A stretch of DNA of 59,419 nt, filler included, from Platydemus manokwari (lineage: Eukaryota): assembly GCA_037951405.1 (NCBI GenBank). It is 5 parts of 5 records of this genome, joined end to end, with 100 filler letters (N's around TTAATTAATTAA, not from the genome) between each part and the next. Parts side by side here need not be neighbours in the genome. Positions count along the whole stretch, not along the records: positions 15,870 to 26,133 come from JBBMOY011152104.1; 4 more parts are not named here. One strand, 5' to 3'. Below, in pieces: positions 15,870 to 26,133 of this stretch. The position numbers were made by a program, and so were the translations under genes. The first letter of the stretch is position 1. Each line of letters starts with the position of its first letter. The notes beneath the pieces were generated by a model. The model had not been told where the DNA came from. It saw nothing but the letters and a program-made list of their open reading frames with translations, and did not search any database.

Positions 15870-16192
15870 AAAGAAGCTTTAGTCAGAATGAAATGTTCAA
15901 ATACCCAAATATCTGATATTGATTTGGACGATATGTTAAGTGATGACTGTCGTTATTAATTGACTTTGTGTTGTAAATAGCTTTATATGATTATTTTAAT
16001 CATTTAAACTTTTTTCTTTACGTAAAATACAAATTTAATCCTTTTTTTTATTTAAAATTGTTGGATTTATTTTATTAAAAAAAATTTAAAAAAATACAAA
16101 AAATGTTTATTTTTTAGAGGCAAGGTTTCGATATAACGCCGTTTTGATATGACTCGGAACGAATTAACCGCGATATACGAGGGTTGCCTGTA
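15870..16192 (+). mobile_element. 3' end of a pogo/Tigger-like Tc1-mariner superfamily element
   Basis: Ends ...CCGCGATATACGAGGGTTGCCTG|TA (reverse complement TA|CAGGCAACCCTCGTATATCGCGG), with a subterminal TTTCGATATAACGC repeat. A short open tail EALVRMKCSNTQISDIDLDDMLSDDCRY* lies at the contig edge. Confidence 0.55.
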
Positions 16193-16800
16193 CTTGATTC
16201 ATCATATTAGGCGTTATTTATTGTTTTGCTGATGTCTGAATATTTAATAACTTTGTATTCTATTAATGTGAATCATATTGTTTCCTATTCTTAATTTTTA
16301 TTTTTTTTCATTAAATATTTACAGTTGTCTTGTTAATCAACAATGAGCATTCAGACAGAAATCATATTCGAACTTCAACCAAAATTATAAGCTCTAATTT
16401 TTATTGAAGTAAGCATAATTGATAAGAAATATTATTACAAAATTATTGTTACTGAAAAGTAAAATATTTTCAAAAATTTTAATGTATTCTTGGTTCAAAT
16501 TTGAAATCTCAATTCAAATTATTATAAGAATCTAGCGGATATTTTATCTTCTTGAAACATCTGAACTCAACATATATTGTTTTCAAGCATTCTATTGATG
16601 AATCATATATGATTCTATTTTCTCTTTCAATCCTATAGTCTTTAATCACATAATTATTCAAGATATATACAATTATCTCAAGAGTCGGATAAAATATAAT
16701 TGAAAACAAAATCTATTAAATTAAGTTTTTCATTGGCCAATAAGTATCATTGGATAAAATTATCAACATCAAATAATGCAGTACGATTTTTGTTATTTTT

Positions 16801-17310
16801 AAAATTATATTTTATTTCTCATTTCTACTTTATTTTGATCAATCAGAAAGAATCATCTGTCTAAACATTGAGCATCAAAACTTTGTCGTTACGAACATCA
16901 AGGCCAATCAAATTGTTAGGCTTCAGAAAGATGTCTTTCAATAAATGGAAGACTACCAGTTGGCACAGAAATAGGAATAATTAGGTCATTTTTAAATATT
17001 AATTTTTTTATTTAGGATTGATGTACTTGTTAATTGAAATAATTATTGATAAAAAGCCTTGATGGTTACCGATGTGATAGTTACATTATCTGTCAACATA
17101 AATGTTTGGTAAAATACTGAACCAGACAATCGTAGTGTGAATAAATACTGCATGTTATTACACAGGTCATACGTGTGTCTTAGCTATAATTTAGAATAAT
17201 TCCATCCAATTATCTTTAAAATAATTCTAAATCACATTTATAATATGATAATGAAATTGTTTGTTATAATTAAATTACTTTGACCTGTAAAATGCACTGA
17301 TGATCAGTGT
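16801..17310 (+). pseudogene. Pseudogene copy of the C-type lectin-PAN gene at 22488-23226
   Basis: Colinear with exon 1 of the intact gene: ATG changed to ATT at 16804, YFDQSE, C*ASERCLSINGRLPVGTEIGIIRS, NVW*NTEPDNRSVNKYC, up to the same GTAAAT donor at about 17309. Multiple stops and frameshifts. Confidence 0.85.
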
Positions 17311-18492
17311 AAATTATTTTTTCTTTTCTGAGATTTTTCCTAAAAAATTATTTGTTTTTAAGGTGAAAATTGTAAATCTTTTTACTATAACGTTGTAGGT
17401 AAACACTGTGGACTTAAATATACTTTGCTGACAAGTAAGAACAATAGATAACTTACATGGCGAGAGTACCACACTATTTCTTAATAGAATATCAGATCGA
17501 TTTAATTCGGGAGATAAATAACTTGGAATTTTATTCAATTCCATCATTATTGATTTTCAATAGAATCAATAAACATGTGATATTTTGATAATAAATATGG
17601 TAAATTCAATATTGGTATTAACTCATAAATATTAAATAAAAATTTATTTTCAAAAGTCAGTTTGAATTTTGAAATGAATTTAAACTCATGCGATAATCCC
17701 CATCAACACAATTTATGAATCACATAATCAATTTAATTTAATAAACCCCAATAATATATTTTATTTAAATATTCTGACTTGATAAATAAATATTTGAGAT
17801 ACTCCACAGTTTCAATAGTCGATATCGACATGTTGAAGCACTTCATCGAGTGTTTACATAAACATGTAATTGAAAATATTAATCATTTTTAGAATAGTTA
17901 TTCTTATGAGAATTTTATTGATATTTCTCTAAAATATATTTCTAATATCGATATTTATCTATTGTTTTCGAAATTGAATAACACAACGATTTGAAAATGG
18001 ATTCATAGTTTTTCTATTTCTATTTGTCACCAGAAGAGTTTAACCTAAACAAAATTATTTTTCGGATTTTTGAATATTGACCCATTCATCATCATTACCA
18101 TCACTATGATAGAAATTCTGTATTTTGAATAAAACTTATTTGTGATTTACACTTGTTATCATATTGTTGATAAACAGGACACCTGAAAATATTAAATGAA
18201 AATATCACCAAGTTAATGAAGAATAGGAAACAATTTGATTGGTCTTCATAAAATATAATTAAACTGTTAGTAGGCGTCTTATTTATAAAATGTTGATAAA
18301 AATATCTGCCTTTCTCAAATATTAATCTATTTTCAACACCGTGTCTAATGCTGAATATGGTATTCGATCCATTAAGAGTTAAATGTAAAACCAGTTATGA
18401 AAAGTTTGTAATAGAATTACAAAATAACATAATATTAAGTTTAATAAAATTTAACAATCACAAAGAGATCTTTTTATGTGAAATTTATTTAT

Positions 18493-19017
18493 CTACTTAC
18501 AAAAATCACAATCACTAATAGCTTTATTGAAGCACGTACCAGGTGCACAATCACGCAGCATGAGTCGTCCGTGAACACATTCTAAATATTTATGTCTGTC
18601 AGAATCACAAGGACCCAAAATGGTGACGTTACATTTTGTGTTAATTATTTCAGTACATGTTTTGGTTTCCTATACAAGAATTATGAACTAAAATATGCAA
18701 TTTAAAATCCAAACCTTTGTATCAGTTGGAGTTTTCCACGGGTATCTCATTAGCATTCTATGTGGTTTGTCAATTATGCAAAAACGATCCTCGTTGAAAC
18801 CACAAAAAGATCCATTTTCATCAGCTACTATTGTGATAGCGTTGCATTTTGTTTGTCTGGTACATGATATTATGCATTCAATAGACGATCGATATTGTTG
18901 AAATTGACAGTTAGTTGTTTCAAACATCCCACGAGGTGGTGTTCGAAATAAATATTGAAATGATTCTCTGCAATCACCAAGAAAAATAAATATGATGTTG
19001 ATTAATATGATTTTCAT
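18493..19017 (-). CDS. Secreted PAN/apple-like + chitin-binding type-2 (CBM14/peritrophin-A) protein, 159 aa, 2 exons
   Basis: Exon 1 19017-18715 has a hydrophobic signal MKIILINIIFIFLG and PAN-type ECIISCTRQTKCNAI...FC. A 45-nt GT-AG intron (18714-18670) leads to exon 2 18669-18493, ETKTC...PCDSDRHKYLECVHGRLMLRDCAPGTCFNKAISDCDFCK*, a CBM14-like pattern. Confidence 0.8.
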
Positions 19018-19419
19018 GAAATCATTAATTTATAAAAAAATATTGTAACTGATATACTCATATATGAGCGATTAACCAATCATATTAGTAGATATTTAAA
19101 ATGATAACAAATAATTACCAATGCATATATATATATACATATATATAATCGAAATTATGTTATCGAAACTTTCTCCAAGAACTTTAAATTAGGGAAAATA
19201 ATGTCAAATAATAATAATAATGACTACAAAAGTAAAGCATACAATATATTAGTTTTAAGAACCATTATTTATCTTCAGATACCAAGAAAATATAAAAAAT
19301 GATGCTATTTACTGAAATAAAGACTAGTTATTTTTAATCCAATCAATATGAATCTTTGGCTTACACGAATGCTAGCCTTTTCTTTATTTATTTAAATAAC
19401 TCGTCTGGTAATAAATGGT

Positions 19420-20020
19420 ATTGGAAACTTTCACCTCTTATTATGCAGAATCGATAACATTTAGAATATTAGACTGTTAGCGATGAAAATATTTACATTG
19501 CCTATGTTTAGATAAATGCCAAAACATTGACAAGATTGTCAACATATGTACTTTATAGAAGTTTCAAAACAAATATAATGATGGAGCAAATGAATATCAC
19601 CACGAGTTCATATAGCAATGGTAGTTCACCAATTTTATGTGACAATAATAAAATATGAGGCACAACAATAAAATATGTTGTGTTTAAAATATTTCTGAAA
19701 CACCATCTAATGTCTCACAGGAATTTCTGTATGAGCGGAATTTTTATCTTTCGTACCTTGTAAAATCGTAATAAATGTAAATTGGAACTTAAATAATTTT
19801 ACTTATACCAACGTAAATATGGCAATTATTGCTCCATATATCGATATGTAAAATGAGTGGTAGTATCTTCAACAAAAGATAGGGATATTGGAGTAGAAGG
19901 AAATTACCTCTGTATTACTTTCTTTGATATCACTACATTTTATTTTCTTAATTTAAAAACAGATTTAGAAGATTCCATCTTTCCAAATGATTTATATATA
20001 TATATATATATATGTGGATT
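19420..20020 (+). pseudogene. Third, 5'-only relic of the lectin duplication unit (upstream region plus start of exon 1)
   Basis: 19420-19620 aligns with about 21925-22165 upstream of the intact lectin. At the expected distance, LEDSIFPNDLY..CGL resembles LEGNVCPKDY..CES, interrupted by an (AT)n expansion. Confidence 0.55.
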
Positions 20021-22487
20021 AAAAAAGGCCATGATATACACGAGATATCGCCTTTCTACTAAAATGAATGACCTTCGTCGAAAGATCACAGAACGATTTT
20101 CACTTTTCCTATTTAACAGGTCTCTCAGCAATATGTAATGTGATATCTAAATCTTGAAAATCGAAACCTGGTCAAATAATACACAATAGAAAATATATTG
20201 AATAAATATTAAAAATATGGCATTTTCACTAGACTGGTGTTCTGATAAATTTCATCTAAAGGCGAGATATGCGTAAGAAGAAAGAAACAGGCCATGTCTT
20301 TACTGAGCCTGTAAAGTCATGAACCAAAAGCTTTGAGACCAAAGAAAGTTAAAATCAATCATAGAAAAATGAACTAAACATATATTTCAATAAATCTCTC
20401 TCTAACACTCTCTCAAACCAAAGTTTAACTGCAATGGTCAAAATAGTTTATCATATATCTGATATCAAAGACACCACAATCAAATAAAATGAGTTGTCAT
20501 TCTCAGGTAAAATAGCCTTCATTATCATTTGTAGTAATGTGTTTTTGTACTGCTGTAATATTGCTATTACAGGGTAAGGCAAAAGATTTCTTCCGATTTC
20601 TATACTAACAACGCCAACCATTTGAGTTAAAGCAAGCTGTGAAAATACTCATTACGGGTGTCCCAAAAATAATCGAGAGATCATCAATATCACCCATGTA
20701 CGAGAACGAAATGTGTCTTTTCCAAAGATGTATTATGTACGCATTAATCATAATATCCACTAAGCAATATAGGAGCCTATCACCAAATCGATTGGCTGAA
20801 CTTTGTATCCTTTCTTTATATCAACATCAAGAATAATAGCAAAGCGATTATTATCACTTGTGACAAGAGAATTAACCATATTATTTAACATTGTTTCCAA
20901 CTACCTCCTATGTAACCTAATTTGTCGAATAATCATACTCAAAACTATACAAGATCAATCAGATTTGAAACAATCCTCGCAACCACACAATAAATACATT
21001 AGATTTGATACCAACTTGCTCAAATTAATCATCTTGTACAACATTACTTACGAAAAACAATGCCTTCAAACTAAACGTACGTTAATAATAGATTACAATT
21101 ATATCTTAAATATACCATACATTTCCCTACAAAATTTTGATAACCAATTAAATCAATATAAACACTCGAACGCTCTCACTTGAAGTAAATTGTAGGATTG
21201 TCTTTCCTCGACTGTCAAAGCAGAGTGCAAGAAATCTGCATAGCAATCGAAGCAAAATTTGCTACTGTGATTAGATGAGAAACTTGCAAGCCTTTTCTTT
21301 AAGTCTGCCCTATCGAATAGTGTAGAGAATTTCACGGAATGTTTCAGTAAACACATAATACTACGGATGTTAAGATAACTAACCTTTGATTTAATATTAA
21401 ATATCTTACTAATTAATTTAGAATACTTTGAATTAAAACACTAATTATTCGAGTGAAATCTAGCATAATATTTTTCAGCACTAGCTTTACAAATTCCAAG
21501 TATTTACGATATACAGTTTTATATTATTATTATTTCCCAATCAAACTTTTATGATTATTCGAGAACTTTGAATCGGTTAATAAATTTGTAAGTACCTTTT
21601 GGTTAAAGAAATATTATATAAATATAAATAAAAAAATATACTCATGTCTTGTAAATAAATATAAAAAATATATATAAATAAAAATAAATAAAAATATATT
21701 CATGTCTTGTATTCGTGCAATAAAACAGATAAATTTATTGACTAAAAATACAACAATAAAGTAAGTCACCGAGAGCTAAACAGAGAAAAGATAATAACAA
21801 CAATGTTTATGGTCAGTGCAAATCAAAATTTGTTTAAAATTTTATATTTTAAATACATATAGCAAACTCCATATATAATGACTTGCACAGTTACTAATAT
21901 ATAGTGAAAGTGAGAAGTTGTTTTATTGAAAATTTCACTCATGGGAATTTATTATAAATAAAATGACATCAACAGTTTATTTTGTAATGCAGAAATGTTA
22001 ACACTTACTGGATTGTGTTTTTGGTTATGCAAATATTGACATTGTAGCTGTTGAGATAAATATCAAAACGTTGACAAGCTTGTCAACTTATATACATGTA
22101 AGGAGATTCTGAACAAATATGAGTGACAAATCAGTAAATATCAATACAGGTTTATATCACATTATCAAAATATCAATTTTATTTATCAAAGAAGCAAAAA
22201 TATTTATTATTTTCAACAATGGAGAAATCAGATTTTTTTCTTTATAAAATTAGTTTATAAATTGCAATCAACATAAACCATATTTTTATAAGAGATCTAC
22301 ACTAAAACTTTTTGAATGACAAAACTTATTTTTATTAAATGAACGAATACGTTATATAAAACATTCGAATGTGAAACTGATAAAAAATCAATAAAAATTC
22401 CAAACAAAATACTCTATTGGTCATCGATTTCAGTTGGTTGAGATAATCAACATAACCCCATATACAATCCAATGTTGCCATTTGAAA

Positions 22488-23226
22488 ATGATATTTTATT
22501 TATTATTAATTTTTTATTTTGATCAATTAGAAGGAAATGTGTGTCCCAAAGATTACACAAAATGTGAATCAATATGCTTTAAATATGAATATCAAAGACA
22601 ACCATTTTGTGAAGCAGCTGAAAGATGTTTTTCAGTAAATGGAAGATTGGCATTGGATACAGAAATAGAATTAATCAGATCTTGTCTAAAGGATGATGCC
22701 GGATTTATTATAGGTATGACAGATTTGTTCAATGAACGATATACCAATAAAACTGGATGGATAAATACCGACGGATCTATTTTTAAAGATGAAAAAGTTT
22801 GGAAAAATACAGAACCAAATAATTTGGTTGGGAATGAAGACTGTACGTATAGTTCTCATAAAGGCCTGCACGATGTTCCATGTGCCTACAGGTTAGCCTC
22901 AGTGTGTGTTAGTTTAAATTTTATGAAGATAAACTCAAAACAATTTAAAATCGATATGAACAACATCTATAATAATGACAATGAAACCGGCTGTTATAAA
23001 GAAATCAAATCGAAAAGTAAATTACATTGTGGAACACTGTAAATATTATTCTTAATCATAAATTATTTTATAAATATTTACTTACAGATGTCTTCAAGAC
23101 GATAACTGTAAGTCATTCTACTACAGTAATGCTCGAAAACAATGTATATTGGTTAAATTTGCAAGAAGTACACTGCCTGCAAATTGGCAAAATAGTGAAA
23201 ATGAATGGCAAGGGTACCACAACTAA
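22488..23226 (+). CDS. Secreted C-type lectin + C-terminal PAN/apple domain protein, 2 exons
   Basis: Signal MIFYLLLIFYF. CTLD motifs CFKY, AAERCFSVNGRLA, IGMTD, WINTDGS, WKNTEPNN, EDC, LHDVPC, SVC. A 49-nt intron (23039-23087) joins in frame to HCGTLCLQDDNCKSFYYSNARKQCIL (PAN pattern). TAA at 23224-23226. Confidence 0.9.
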
Positions 23227-24419
23227 AATTAAACAAGAATCTTTTTGATTTTATTTGGTAATGGAATTAATTTTTGTTTAACTGTGATTGATAAAAAATC
23301 AACCTTTTCTGTAATCTTTTTTTTCTGTAATTGTTTTATTGATTAAACGGTCATTGATTTTTATATTTAACCGATAAACAAGTGATATTATGATGTGCAA
23401 TATTTTGTATGTAATGTGTTATAAATTTTCAAAACAATTATAAATTCAGCATTTCACTTTCAACTTTGAAATCAGATGTGAAGTATTGATGTGCAATTTA
23501 TAAGTGACACTCCATATTTGATTTAGAAAATTTCCAGTGTATAATATGGGGTTATCTCAAGAATATAACTTGCATTGCACACTTCATTTTATTGTTTATT
23601 GATTGGATTATAATGAACCGTGTTCAAAATTCTAATCATATTGAATTAGTTTATCAATCAATGATAACATTTTAAATCCTCTTTCTTATTATATCTTATT
23701 TGTTATACATTGATTTTATCATGTGATTTTATCGCAAGCAACATATAAGTTAGACCTTTGACGAATATATTTTGTATAAATTAGTTTGCAAATTATTTAT
23801 TGATAATTTATTGATTAATATAGATTTATGAATTTTTGTCTGCCGTCAAGGGTATCATCACATTAATCAATAATTTTTTAGAAAAAGTTCTAGTCATTTA
23901 TATTTTTTCAAAAACTTCACATCACTGTGTATTTCCAAAAGGGCGCTCATGTAAGTGTTCAGGAGATTGAGGCTTGTATTACCACAAAGCAGCACTCTTA
24001 ACGGGAATCGAGATCTGTTAATCAATGGGCTTTATCTAATATAAAATAAGGGCACTAATCTCATAATACTGAATGAACGAAAGAAAAATAATTGAAATGC
24101 ATTTTAGAAGCTCTATTTTGAATTCATCAAAGTGGGATATTTTGAATGAAAATCAACGACTCTGAATCAGCGTCTTTTGTTATGAACGCCAAATTTATAT
24201 TCTTACAAACCATAACAGAGCCTCGCATTTCATATTATGAGTATTTAAATTACAAAATTATTTTACCAAATATTGTCTCACAAATTGGAAAATCAAGAAG
24301 AATGGATTGACATTATAGACGGACAAGTCATGTACTAATTTGAAAAGAATAAACCTTTTTATCTTAAGCCAAAATCTTTACCAAACAGATAAATTATCAA
24401 ATAAGTTAGATGATGGTGA

Positions 24420-25200
24420 AATAGCTATAGTGAATGTGAGAATGTTAAATTTAATATTAGAAGATTTAGTGTTATATAGCATTTGAATTTAAAACGCTAA
24501 ATTTTATCTAGAATTAATTTGATTTGTTTAAATAATTGTAGTTAAATAGATTATTTGAAAATGTTTATAATGTGTGCTTTCCAATAAAGTAGTCACGTCC
24601 ATGACAAAGAAAGGAAGGTGAGAGGCGGTGAGTTTATAAACGATACGATATTATAATTAAATAATGTCAATCACCTCTATCTAATAAATGAGTTACCGGA
24701 TCGCTTAGAATCGACTGACCTATGTTCAAATATTAATCACGTAAAGCCCTTATCCATTTCAGTCTTCAAGGATGTCATTTGAATAATTGCTACTATTACC
24801 AAGATCCGTACCCAATACCTCTCCACTCTGCCTACTAATGTAAAGAGCATAGAGTTTGTTTGACTAAATTAAGATTTGGTTATATAACCATCGTGTATAT
24901 AAACTACTGGGTTGTATTTAAATCAGTAAATAATGCGTAGCATTTTATTGTTTTGTTAAAATTATTTTATCTAGCACCTAATCCACATAAGCTCTATTGG
25001 TGAAGTCTCATAATCTGAAATACTTAAAAATCATTTTTGAACGAGACTGTTTTTTGAGAGCAGTTATTTATGGAATAAAATTCCATGCATGTTAGAGGAA
25101 AAATTGGATTGGGAGATCAACATTATATAAAGCTCTAATCTCGGGATGAATCTAAAACAAGAGATAGACAATTTATTAGATATCTTAAATTGTAAATCTC
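24420..25200 (+). mobile_element. Possible highly decayed non-LTR (LINE) APE-endonuclease remnant
   Basis: Fragments IAIVNVRML, DKERKVRGGEFI, IEFV*L, TGLY and WIG in the order expected for an APE domain. Heavily interrupted. Confidence 0.35.
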
Positions 25201-26133
25201 ATATTTTCCGTTGAGTTCAAACGTTACTTTAAATGTCGGCTGAGTTGAAAATCATTCTAATATTAAATTCTAATATCAGTTTTATATTTTATATTTTTAT
25301 ATTTTATATTTTTGCATTTTATTGAATGAATTCTAGTCTAGATTTGTAAAATAATTTTGCAAAATCTTAAATTTTACCTTTATTCCGTTGGTTTTTACAA
25401 TATTGATTAAGAACATTAAAACAAAACTCACATTAAAATGAAATAAAATGTTAGTAAAGAAACACGAAAGCAACTAATGAAAGTATCTCATTGGCCATGA
25501 ATATACACTGCATATTGTTTATAGATGCTCAGGTTTATGAATAATCAATAATCAATTAAATACGGTAGTTATAACCACCTTGGTTTCATCAGAGAACATT
25601 GTCGGGAGATTTACAGATACCGATAAAAATACATGATTTAGTTTTCATATGAATCTTTAAATCTCAACTTCAGTCAGTATTCAGCAAGTTTGCCCTAAAG
25701 ATTAACATGATAATAACTAGCCAATTAAAGTATAATTTCTAAAATTGGATCCACTGATATTTTATTGAATTATTGATTAAATTGATTCTATGGATAAGTG
25801 GATATATTACATCACTAGTGTTTTACATTATATTTGACTTATTATACATTATATAATATTATGAACAAAAAGGTGTAATTATCCCATTTGAAAATAAAAG
25901 ATATATTTTATACGAAGGAATAAATGGATTAGTTTGGTGAAATTTTGAAAAGGGAATTAAAAATTAATAAAAATAAAAAGAAATATATTTTTTAACTACA
26001 TATTTCATAAGGAGAAGATGTTAAAAGACTTTCATAAAACACATTTCCTATCGAAGCGAAGGAGTTTGCTTTATAATAGTTTTTTTGTCACTTATAATAT
26101 CTAATACTTTTTTTATCATTTATGGTGAGAGTC

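What the first reader, a model, noticed from the sequence alone, without database searches (positions are those of the whole stretch)
16801..23226. Cluster of small secreted PAN/apple proteins fused to two different sugar-binding modules
Seen: within 6.5 kb of one contig lie a signal+CTLD+PAN gene, two decayed copies of it, and an oppositely oriented signal+PAN+CBM14 gene. Established: CTLDs with EPN typically bind mannose/GlcNAc-type sugars, CBM14 binds chitin, and PAN domains mediate protein or glycan interactions. Inference: this may be a modular secreted glycan-recognition kit (mucus, gut or antimicrobial) in which PAN is a shared adaptor and the lectin module varies, evolving by birth and death.
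Basis: partly seen in the sequence, partly recalled or inferred. Interest (0 to 1): 0.7.

Follow-up and report, generated by a model that had tools for sequence, protein, structure and literature searches.

The report
Two secreted lectin-type genes, one pseudogene
An AT-rich invertebrate contig carries a small secreted C-type-lectin+PAN gene, one dead duplicate of it and a neighbouring small secreted gene ending in a chitin-binding module; these are ordinary lineage-specific sugar-binding genes, with no sign of a coordinated "kit".

Summary
The domain calls mostly hold. Gene A (+, 22488-23226, two exons, 229 aa) has a hydrophobic N-terminus, a Pfam-significant C-type lectin domain with EPN, and a PAN_1 domain split by a 49-bp intron. 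Gene B (-, 19017-18493, two exons, 159 aa) has a signal-like N-terminus and a Pfam-significant but atypical CBM14 module. Its N-terminal six-cysteine domain gets no Pfam PAN hit. It is called PAN-like only from protein-language-model neighbours and a sub-threshold PAN_2 hit in its single known homologue.

There is one decayed copy of gene A (16797-17472), not two. It has lost its start codon, has at least six stops and nine indels, and keeps the intron position, so it is a DNA-level duplicate. The only other repeat of gene A is a 131-bp copy of its upstream region, which lies upstream of gene B.

The "shared PAN adaptor" idea is not supported. The two PAN(-like) domains show no detectable similarity and their introns sit at different places. 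The lectin's WND motif reads LHD, so sugar binding is not assured. CTLD+PAN proteins are already known in nematodes and molluscs. No RNA data exist, so expression and co-expression are untested. Both structure predictions failed.

The parts
22488..23038 (+). Gene A exon 1: hydrophobic signal-like N-terminus (aa 1-16), C-type lectin-like domain (aa ~17-141), linker, and the first half of the PAN domain (Cys169, Cys181)
   Evidence: The first ATG of the stop-to-stop ORF is at 22488. Pfam Lectin_C scores 33.9 bits. PDB sequence matches include codakine 2vuv at E 7.7e-8, Mincle, SIGNR1, DC-SIGN and MBP. The donor is CT|GTAAAT at 23038/23039.
22812..22820 (+). EPN tripeptide of the Ca2+/sugar site (aa 109-111). 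The downstream NEDC (aa 116-119) is kept.
   Evidence: it aligns with the EPN and NEDC of codakine.
22866..22874 (+). LHD where canonical CTLDs have WND (aa 127-129). The Ca2+/sugar-ligating Asn is replaced by His.
   Evidence: In the alignment to codakine, 'swnd' aligns with 'glhd'; positions are.
23039..23087 (+). Gene A intron, 49 bp, GT..AG, phase 2, lying inside the PAN domain. An in-frame TAA follows immediately if it is not spliced.
   Evidence: Sequence reading. The PAN_1 profile match resumes in frame after the acceptor.
23088..23226 (+). Gene A exon 2: second half of the PAN/apple domain, then the stop codon TAA at 23224-23226
   Evidence: Pfam PAN_1 scores 26.1 bits over profile positions 31-73 of 76.
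18715..19017 (-). Gene B exon 1: signal-like N-terminus (aa 1-15) followed by a six-Cys PAN-like domain (Cys37-Cys80, 18778-18909)
   Evidence: ORF. No Pfam PAN hit. 29 of 30 ESM-Atlas neighbour clusters are PAN_1 at 0.95. The only homologue, P0001 (50% identical), hits PAN_2 at E 0.018. The donor is AAG|GTTTGG.
18670..18714 (-). Gene B intron, 45 bp, GT..AG, phase 0, lying between the two domains
   Evidence: Sequence reading. The metagenomic homologue P0001 reads through into non-homologous sequence at the same point.
18493..18669 (-). Gene B exon 2: eight-Cys module with a CBM14 (peritrophin-A) match (aa 26-56 = 18502-18594), stop codon TAG at 18493-18495, and AATAAA a few bases after the stop
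   Evidence: Pfam CBM_14 scores 26.4 bits over profile positions 16-46 of 53. PDB sequence matches include 8in3 at E 7.9e-5 and the CBM14 modules of chitinase 3w4r, squid beak protein 7bwe and chitotriosidase 6so0. The 3' context is.
16797..17472 (+). Pseudogene: one full-length, collinear, decayed duplicate of gene A (both exons and the intron). ATG is changed to ATT, there are at least 6 in-frame stops, and the indels are -10, -4, -1, +6, -5, -31, -1, -6 and -12.
   Evidence: blastn 69.5% over 210 nt, E 2.7e-21, plus collinear tblastn pieces; pairwise alignment A2; translations with stops.
22027..22158 (.). Upstream element of gene A (330-460 bp before the ATG), with the perfect palindrome TTGACAAGCTTGTCAA at 22071-22086
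19483..19614 (.). Second copy of that 131-bp element, 466-597 bp upstream of gene B's ATG, with the palindrome TTGACAAGATTGTCAA at 19527-19542
   Evidence: Local alignment score 91 against shuffles of 30 +/- 3. The pattern occurs only at these two sites, with 0.06 expected by chance.

Best explanation
This stretch of an AT-rich (about 26% GC), short-intron invertebrate genome (possibly a rotifer) holds two unrelated, lineage-specific genes for small secreted cysteine-rich glycan-binding proteins, plus one dead DNA-level duplicate of the first. Gene A encodes a 229-aa protein: signal, long-form C-type lectin domain, then a C-terminal PAN/apple domain. Inferred mechanism: it is secreted. The CTLD binds a carbohydrate through the EPN-type Ca2+ site, which would give mannose/GlcNAc/fucose-type equatorial-OH specificity if the site is still competent despite WND reading LHD. 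The PAN domain would supply a second protein- or glycan-contact surface or mediate oligomerisation. Gene B encodes a 159-aa protein: signal, a PAN-like six-Cys domain, then a variant CBM14 module. Inferred mechanism: the CBM14 docks it onto chitin, which could be the animal's own chitinous structures or gut lining, or fungal or prey chitin. The N-terminal domain would then present a second binding surface. The A family turns over by local duplication and decay (the pseudogene) and probably has close paralogues elsewhere in the genome. The adjacency of A and B is most likely incidental or a loose clustering of secreted-protein genes, not a modular system. Shown here: the domain content, gene structures, pseudogene and repeat. 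Inferred: secretion, ligands and biological role.
For: Pfam matches above the curated cut-offs for Lectin_C, PAN_1 (gene A) and CBM_14 (gene B). PDB sequence matches of A's CTLD to EPN-type mannose binders: codakine, Mincle, SIGNR1, DC-SIGN and MBP. PDB matches of B's exon 2 to the CBM14 modules of chitinases and a beak chitin-binding protein. Canonical GT..AG introns of 45 and 49 bp that restore frame into the next domain, hydrophobic N-termini, and AATAAA just after B's stop. The pseudogene is collinear, including the intron. An independent contig set of the one DNA run matches both genes with 0 differences, and summed contig depth is 4-12x baseline over gene A. The CTLD+PAN architecture recurs elsewhere: five ESM-Atlas clusters combine PAN_1 and Lectin_C, commonest in Mollusca and about 226 aa, and C. 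elegans has class IV CTLD+CW/PAN-3 proteins (PMC5297725). No similarity was found between A's PAN and B's N-terminal domain.
Against: No transcript evidence at all: the only public run that holds this DNA is a DNA run. B's PAN assignment fails Pfam, and both AlphaFold models were too poor to test any fold (pLDDT 39.6 and 60.5). The WND motif reads LHD in A, and cysteine spacing in B's CBM14 is atypical (C-x2-C at the end, extra Cys), so either domain may have lost or changed its sugar binding. A shared 131-bp palindrome-bearing element upstream of both intact genes could mean that they are co-regulated after all.
Confidence: 0.6

Rival explanations
1. A and B form a co-regulated, modular secreted glycan-recognition kit for mucus, gut or antimicrobial use. 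PAN is the common adaptor, the lectin module varies (CTLD or CBM14), and the two act together on the same target, for example fungal walls that present both mannan and chitin.
For: Both are small, probably secreted proteins with a PAN or PAN-like domain plus a carbohydrate module. They are divergently oriented, 3.5 kb apart. Each has, 330-600 bp upstream of its ATG, a copy of a 131-bp element with a conserved 16-bp palindrome that occurs nowhere else in the piece.
Against: The two PAN(-like) domains have no detectable sequence relationship and different intron positions. The domain order is opposite: PAN is C-terminal in A and N-terminal in B. The 131-bp element could equally be a relic of a lost third A-type copy. 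There are no expression data. B has a homologue in another organism, but the contig is too short to show any neighbouring gene (731 bp).
Confidence: 0.12
2. These are structural matrix proteins, not immune lectins. B is a chitin-matrix component of jaws/trophi, eggshell or gut lining, comparable to peritrophins or squid-beak chitin-binding proteins. A is an extracellular-matrix CTLD protein whose sugar site is degenerate.
For: B's exon 2 matches a squid beak chitin-binding protein (7bwe) and the CBM14 modules of chitinases. WND reads LHD in A. PAN domains occur in apical matrix proteins (PMC4970718 listed; not read in detail).
Against: A keeps EPN and the following Glu and Asp, so 4 of 5 site-2 ligands remain. 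Rapid birth and death and high divergence (no homologues among 5.8 billion clusters) are more typical of immune or environment-facing genes than of core matrix genes.
Confidence: 0.18
3. Gene B's N-terminal domain is not PAN at all. It is an orphan cysteine-rich domain, so the two genes share nothing but secretion.
For: B exon 1 has no Pfam PAN hit at E<=10. A profile search of PDB sequences finds no PAN or apple structure. hhalign against gene A is negative. Only one homologue exists among 1.84 billion representatives.
Against: 29 of 30 nearest ESM-Atlas clusters carry PAN_1, at 0.94-0.95 with 174-182 shared features. The best Pfam family for the homologue P0001 is PAN_2 (E 0.018), with PAN_4 also listed. 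The Cys spacing C-x3-C-x5-C is the same as in A's PAN.
Confidence: 0.1

Closest known systems
CTLD + PAN (CW/PAN-3) secreted proteins of nematodes (C. elegans class IV CLEC proteins; PMC5297725) and the ~226-aa PAN_1+Lectin_C clusters commonest in molluscs (ESM Atlas)
   Same: A signal peptide, one C-type lectin-like domain and one PAN-superfamily domain in a protein of about 230 aa. Both belong to lineage-expanded gene families.
   Different: No sequence homologue of gene A was found by word-based search, so orthology is not shown. The nematode proteins use the PAN-3/CW subtype, whereas gene A matches PAN_1. The rotifer lectin survey (PMC8878817) lists single-CRD, double-CRD and EGF+CRD lectins and mentions no CTLD+PAN.
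Codakine (PDB 2vuv), the mannose-type C-type lectin of the clam Codakia; also Mincle, SIGNR1, DC-SIGN and MBP-A CRDs
   Same: These are the best sequence matches of A's CTLD (E 7.7e-8 to 1e-3). They share the long-form Cys pattern, EPN and the following N-E-D-C.
   Different: Those CRDs have WND where gene A has LHD. None of them carries a PAN domain.
CBM14 / peritrophin-A (ChtBD2) modules: chitinase 3w4r, chitotriosidase 6so0, squid beak chitin-binding protein 7bwe, the three-repeat protein 8in3
   Same: Pfam CBM_14 scores above its cut-off. The core K-Y-x-x-C ... C-x-x-G-x-x-F-N ... C-D-F aligns with them and the aromatic positions are kept.
   Different: Only profile positions 16-46 of 53 are matched. 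There are eight Cys with unusual spacing (C-x8-C where C-x5-C is usual, and a terminal C-x2-C). The module is fused to an N-terminal PAN-like domain, a pairing I did not find described in the searched papers. Chitinase PE of hemipterans and rotifers combines PAN with ChtBD1 modules, not CBM14.
P0001, a 109-aa predicted protein from an ENA metagenome contig of 731 bp
   Same: 50% identical to B exon 1 over aa 3-99, with all six domain cysteines conserved. Its reading frame leaves homology at the same place as B's exon 1 ends.

Membership tests
C-type lectin-like domain (Pfam PF00059), gene A | Profile match above the curated gathering score | tested here: met
   33.9 bits against a cut-off of 22.6, over profile positions 3-106 of 107.
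C-type lectin-like domain (Pfam PF00059), gene A | Conserved CTLD cysteines (C1-C4) plus the long-form N-terminal pair | tested here: met
   Cys19/30, 47, 119, 132 and 140 align with the codakine and Mincle cysteines.
Ca2+-dependent mannose-type CRD (EPN / WND site 2) | All five site-2 ligands present (E-P-N, Glu, and the Asn-Asp of WND) | tested here: not met
   EPN (aa 109-111) and the Glu and Asp of NEDC are present, but WND reads LHD, so Asn is replaced by His. Four of five ligands are kept. Actual binding is not testable here.
PAN/apple (Pfam PF00024 PAN_1), gene A | Profile match above the gathering score | tested here: met
   Exon 2 alone scores 26.1 bits against 21.4, over profile positions 31-73 of 76. 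The N-terminal half lies in exon 1 (Cys169, Cys181). The joined protein was not searched, by rule.
PAN/apple superfamily, gene B N-terminal domain | Profile match to any PAN family | tested here: not met
   No PAN hit at E<=10 for exon 1 or trimmed versions. The homologue P0001 hits PAN_2 at E 0.018 with 15.6 bits, below the cut-off of 21.1.
PAN/apple superfamily, gene B N-terminal domain | PAN fold and characteristic disulfide pattern | tested here: inconclusive
   The Cys pattern C-x10-C-x3-C-x5-C-x13-C-x7-C is compatible. 29 of 30 ESM-Atlas neighbours are PAN_1. The AlphaFold model has pLDDT 39.6 and is unusable.
CBM14 / peritrophin-A (Pfam PF01607), gene B | Profile match above the gathering score | tested here: met
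   26.4 bits against 22.1, but over profile positions 16-46 of 53 only.
CBM14 / peritrophin-A (Pfam PF01607), gene B | Canonical six-Cys spacing and fold | tested here: inconclusive
   Eight Cys with non-canonical spacing. The AlphaFold model has pLDDT 60.5 and Foldseek finds nothing at E<=0.001.
CBM14 / peritrophin-A (Pfam PF01607), gene B | Binds chitin | not testable with these tools
   Needs a chitin-bead pull-down of recombinant protein.
Processed versus duplicated pseudogene (16797-17472) | Retains the intron of the parent, so it is a DNA-level duplicate | tested here: met
   The alignment runs through the intron region, and both exons are collinear on the same strand.

The most novel reading that the evidence does not exclude
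The two intact genes are a divergently arranged, co-regulated pair driven by a shared palindromic cis-element (TTGACAAGNTTGTCAA, 330-600 bp upstream of each ATG). Together they would encode a two-component recognition system for mannan plus chitin, for example against fungal parasites. Signal + PAN-like + CBM14 would then be a previously undescribed small-lectin architecture.
Probability: 0.1. Interest if true: 0.55.

Novelty: new member of a known kind. Interest (0 to 1): 0.25.

Why it matters
The finding adds two very divergent members to large, well-known families of invertebrate secreted glycan-binding proteins, and it gives a small example of birth-and-death turnover. The CTLD+PAN architecture is already described in nematodes and appears in molluscan protein clusters. 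The PAN-like+CBM14 pairing may be undescribed, but it is a recombination of common extracellular modules. It would matter more only if the shared upstream palindrome proved to couple the two genes functionally, or if the proteins turned out to have useful glycan specificities.

Tried and rejected
1. Second decayed copy. blastn (word 7), tblastn (word 2) and Smith-Waterman against shuffles over the whole piece, on both strands, found none.

2. Homologues. Gene A exon 1 had no hits in the search for homologous proteins. HMMER over 1.84 billion representatives with B exon 1 gave one real hit, P0001; the second hit was a spurious match of the signal region to a protocadherin. A profile search added nothing. 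Two metagenome scans found nothing.

The cluster look-up shows a single 731-bp contig.

4. Structure. AlphaFold on B exon 1 (2-sequence alignment) gave pLDDT 39.6. AlphaFold on B exon 2 (single sequence) gave pLDDT 60.5, and Foldseek against PDB returned only noise. I draw no conclusions from these models.

5. Profile of B exon 1 against PDB sequences: only chance-level hits.

6. Expression. Only one DNA run holds the stretch and no RNA run does. Read laying therefore shows only that the assembly is reproduced.

7. Other genes. Pfam on ten other ORFs, Rfam and tRNA scans were all negative.

9. Every search was made exon by exon, by reference.

10. The joints reported by read laying (17772->21605, 21633->19207) fall in AT-rich low-complexity sequence, and I treated them as spurious.


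Full report
SETTING. The piece (15870-26133) is about 26% GC throughout. It has no tRNA genes or Rfam families. Its two convincing genes have 45- and 49-bp GT..AG introns, which fits a small AT-rich invertebrate genome. The organism is not given. The only taxonomic hint is that the nearest ESM-Atlas clusters to gene B's first exon are commonest in Rotifera. I treat "rotifer" as a guess. One public DNA run holds 96% of the sampled words, and no RNA run does. The contigs of that run reproduce both genes with zero differences. It is probably the source sample, so it is not independent support.

GENE A (+). The stop-to-stop frame 22395-23039 has its first ATG at 22488. Exon 1 (22488-23038) starts with a hydrophobic, signal-like stretch of about 12 residues (mean Kyte-Doolittle 2.05, against -0.99 for the next 28 residues). 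Pfam places a Lectin_C domain at aa 38-141 (33.9 bits, cut-off 22.6, E 5.5e-8). Against PDB sequences the best matches are EPN-type mannose binders: codakine 2vuv (E 7.7e-8), Mincle, SIGNR1/CD209b, DC-SIGN(R) and MBP-A/C. These cover aa 17-141, including the long-form N-terminal cysteine pair.

The position where codakine and the others have WND reads L-H-D (aa 127-129). From established knowledge of MBP-type CRDs, that Asn ligates both Ca2+ and the sugar hydroxyl. Four of the five site-2 ligands are therefore present, and sugar binding is plausible but not assured.

The frame hits TAA right after a CT|GTAAAT donor. A TTACAG acceptor 49 bp later restores the frame into exon 2 (23088-23226). 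On its own, exon 2 matches PAN_1 positions 31-73 of 76 at 26.1 bits (cut-off 21.4). The missing first half of the PAN domain is the end of exon 1 (Cys169, Cys181), so the intron sits inside the domain in phase 2.

GENE B (-). Exon 1 (19017-18715) starts M-K followed by 11 hydrophobic residues (mean Kyte-Doolittle 2.57). An AAG|GTTTGG donor and a GTATAG acceptor define a 45-bp phase-0 intron. Exon 2 (18669-18493) ends in TAG, with AATAAA a few bases downstream. The product would be 159 aa.

Exon 2 matches Pfam CBM_14 at 26.4 bits (cut-off 22.1), but only over profile positions 16-46 of 53. PDB sequences agree: 8in3 (three CBM14-like repeats, E 7.9e-5), the CBM14 of chitinase 3w4r, squid beak chitin-binding protein 7bwe and chitotriosidase 6so0. 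The module has eight cysteines with non-canonical spacing. I call it a variant CBM14.

It gives no Pfam PAN hit, even at E<=10 and after trimming. HMMER over 1.84 billion representative proteins finds a single true relative, P0001 (109 aa, 50% identity, from a 731-bp ENA metagenome contig). All six domain cysteines are conserved between them, and P0001 loses homology exactly where B's exon 1 ends, which suggests the same intron. P0001's best Pfam family is PAN_2 (E 0.018, 15.6 bits, below the cut-off of 21.1), with PAN_4 also listed. In the ESM Atlas, 29 of the 30 nearest clusters to exon 1 carry PAN_1, at scores of 0.94-0.95 with 174-182 shared features. By the tool's own calibration those figures are uncommon for chance hits. 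The cysteine pattern C-x10-C-x3-C-x5-C-x13-C-x7-C shares the C-x3-C-x5-C core with gene A's PAN. I put "PAN-like" at about 85%, but it fails the formal profile test.

Structure prediction could not help. The models had pLDDT 39.6 (exon 1, two-sequence alignment) and 60.5 (exon 2, single sequence), and the Foldseek output was noise.

THE DECAYED COPIES. There is one, not two. Region 16797-17472 (+) is collinear with all of gene A: the signal region, both halves of the CTLD, the first PAN half, the intron and the second PAN half. The best blastn segment is 69.5% identical over 210 nt (E 2.7e-21), and the chained tblastn pieces have a summed E of 1e-12. In the pairwise alignment the start codon is ATT, there are nine indels (-10, -4, -1, +6, -5, -31, -1, -6, -12), and the translated pieces contain at least six stops.

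Because the intron is retained, this is a DNA-level tandem-type duplicate and not a retrocopy. The middle of the pseudogene (about 16997-17100) is too decayed to align well. Nothing else in the piece resembles gene A's or gene B's coding sequence above shuffled controls.

Summed contig depth over gene A's exons is 46-147, against about 12 for the flanks. In addition, 58 of the 98 contigs laid are only 95-99% alike. This suggests near-identical paralogous or allelic segments elsewhere, though contig depth is not a copy number.

IS IT A "KIT" WITH PAN AS SHARED ADAPTOR? The evidence is against a shared-module origin.
- hhalign of the B-exon-1 profile against either exon of gene A finds nothing (probability 1% or less).
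- The domain order is opposite: CTLD-PAN in A, PAN-like-CBM14 in B.
- The introns are at non-equivalent places.

If both domains are PAN, they are ancient, independent representatives of a very common extracellular fold.

One observation could favour a functional link. A 131-bp stretch upstream of gene A (22027-22158) is duplicated at 19483-19614, upstream of gene B. The local alignment score is 91, against 30 +/- 3 for shuffles. Its best-conserved core is a 16-bp palindrome, TTGACAAG(C/A)TTGTCAA, which occurs only at these two sites; 0.06 would be expected by chance. This may be a shared cis-element. It may equally be the last relic of a third A-type copy, whose body would have lain at about 19940-20700, where nothing alignable remains. 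Expression data would decide, and none exist.

COMPARISON WITH WHAT IS KNOWN. CTLD+PAN is not new. [quoted passage not shown] The ESM Atlas holds five clusters combining PAN_1 and Lectin_C near gene A, about 226 aa and commonest in Mollusca. The one survey of rotifer secretory lectins reports single-CRD, double-CRD and EGF+CRD C-type lectins, does not mention PAN, and notes that rotifers lack massive tandem expansions (PMC8878817). If the host is a rotifer, gene A would be a small addition to that catalogue.

I found no description of a small PAN+CBM14 protein. The nearest case is chitinase PE, which combines PAN with ChtBD1 modules and has orthologues in rotifers (bioRxiv 10.1101/2021.10.30.466601). 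Absence from a limited paper library is weak evidence of novelty.

VERDICT. It needs two corrections. There is one pseudogene, not two, and PAN in gene B is probable but unproven. The interpretation as generic secreted glycan-binding proteins evolving by birth and death is reasonable. The "modular kit with a PAN adaptor" is not supported, and the co-function part is untestable here. This is an ordinary, lineage-specific lectin locus, and I rate its interest as low to moderate.

Noticed in passing
window 22027-22158 and 19483-19614: A 131-bp direct duplicate whose core is a perfect or near-perfect 16-bp palindrome, TTGACAAG(C/A)TTGTCAA. It lies upstream of both intact genes and is not high-copy by contig depth. 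It could be a shared cis-element or a relic of a lost gene copy.
   Followed up: partly
window 16253-16344 and 18163-18258: An inverted repeat (77% over 96 nt) brackets the pseudogene and the 3' flank of gene B. Its meaning is unknown; it could be a transposon end or an inverted segmental duplication.
   Followed up: no
window 20450-21440 (- strand): This is the most GC-rich part of the piece (0.32-0.33, GC skew down to -0.26). It has frame-hopping ORFs containing reverse-transcriptase-like strings (LDVDIKKGY, GTPVMSIFTACFN). It may be a decayed non-LTR retroelement, but Pfam finds nothing significant in the pieces.
   Followed up: partly
window 22440-23239, 17440-17639, 18840-19039: Summed contig depth in the one DNA run is 3-12 times the baseline of about 12. 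Many contigs are only 95-99% alike or fit only partly. This suggests close paralogous segments of gene A, and perhaps of gene B's 5' end, elsewhere in the genome.
   Followed up: no
window 15870-15959 (+): A reading frame enters from the left edge of the piece and stops at 15957-15959 (30 codons). It may be the 3' end of an upstream gene cut by the piece's edge, and it is too short to identify.
   Followed up: no
window 19116-19152 and 19983-20022: (TA)n-type microsatellites lie on either side of the 19483-19614 element.
   Followed up: no
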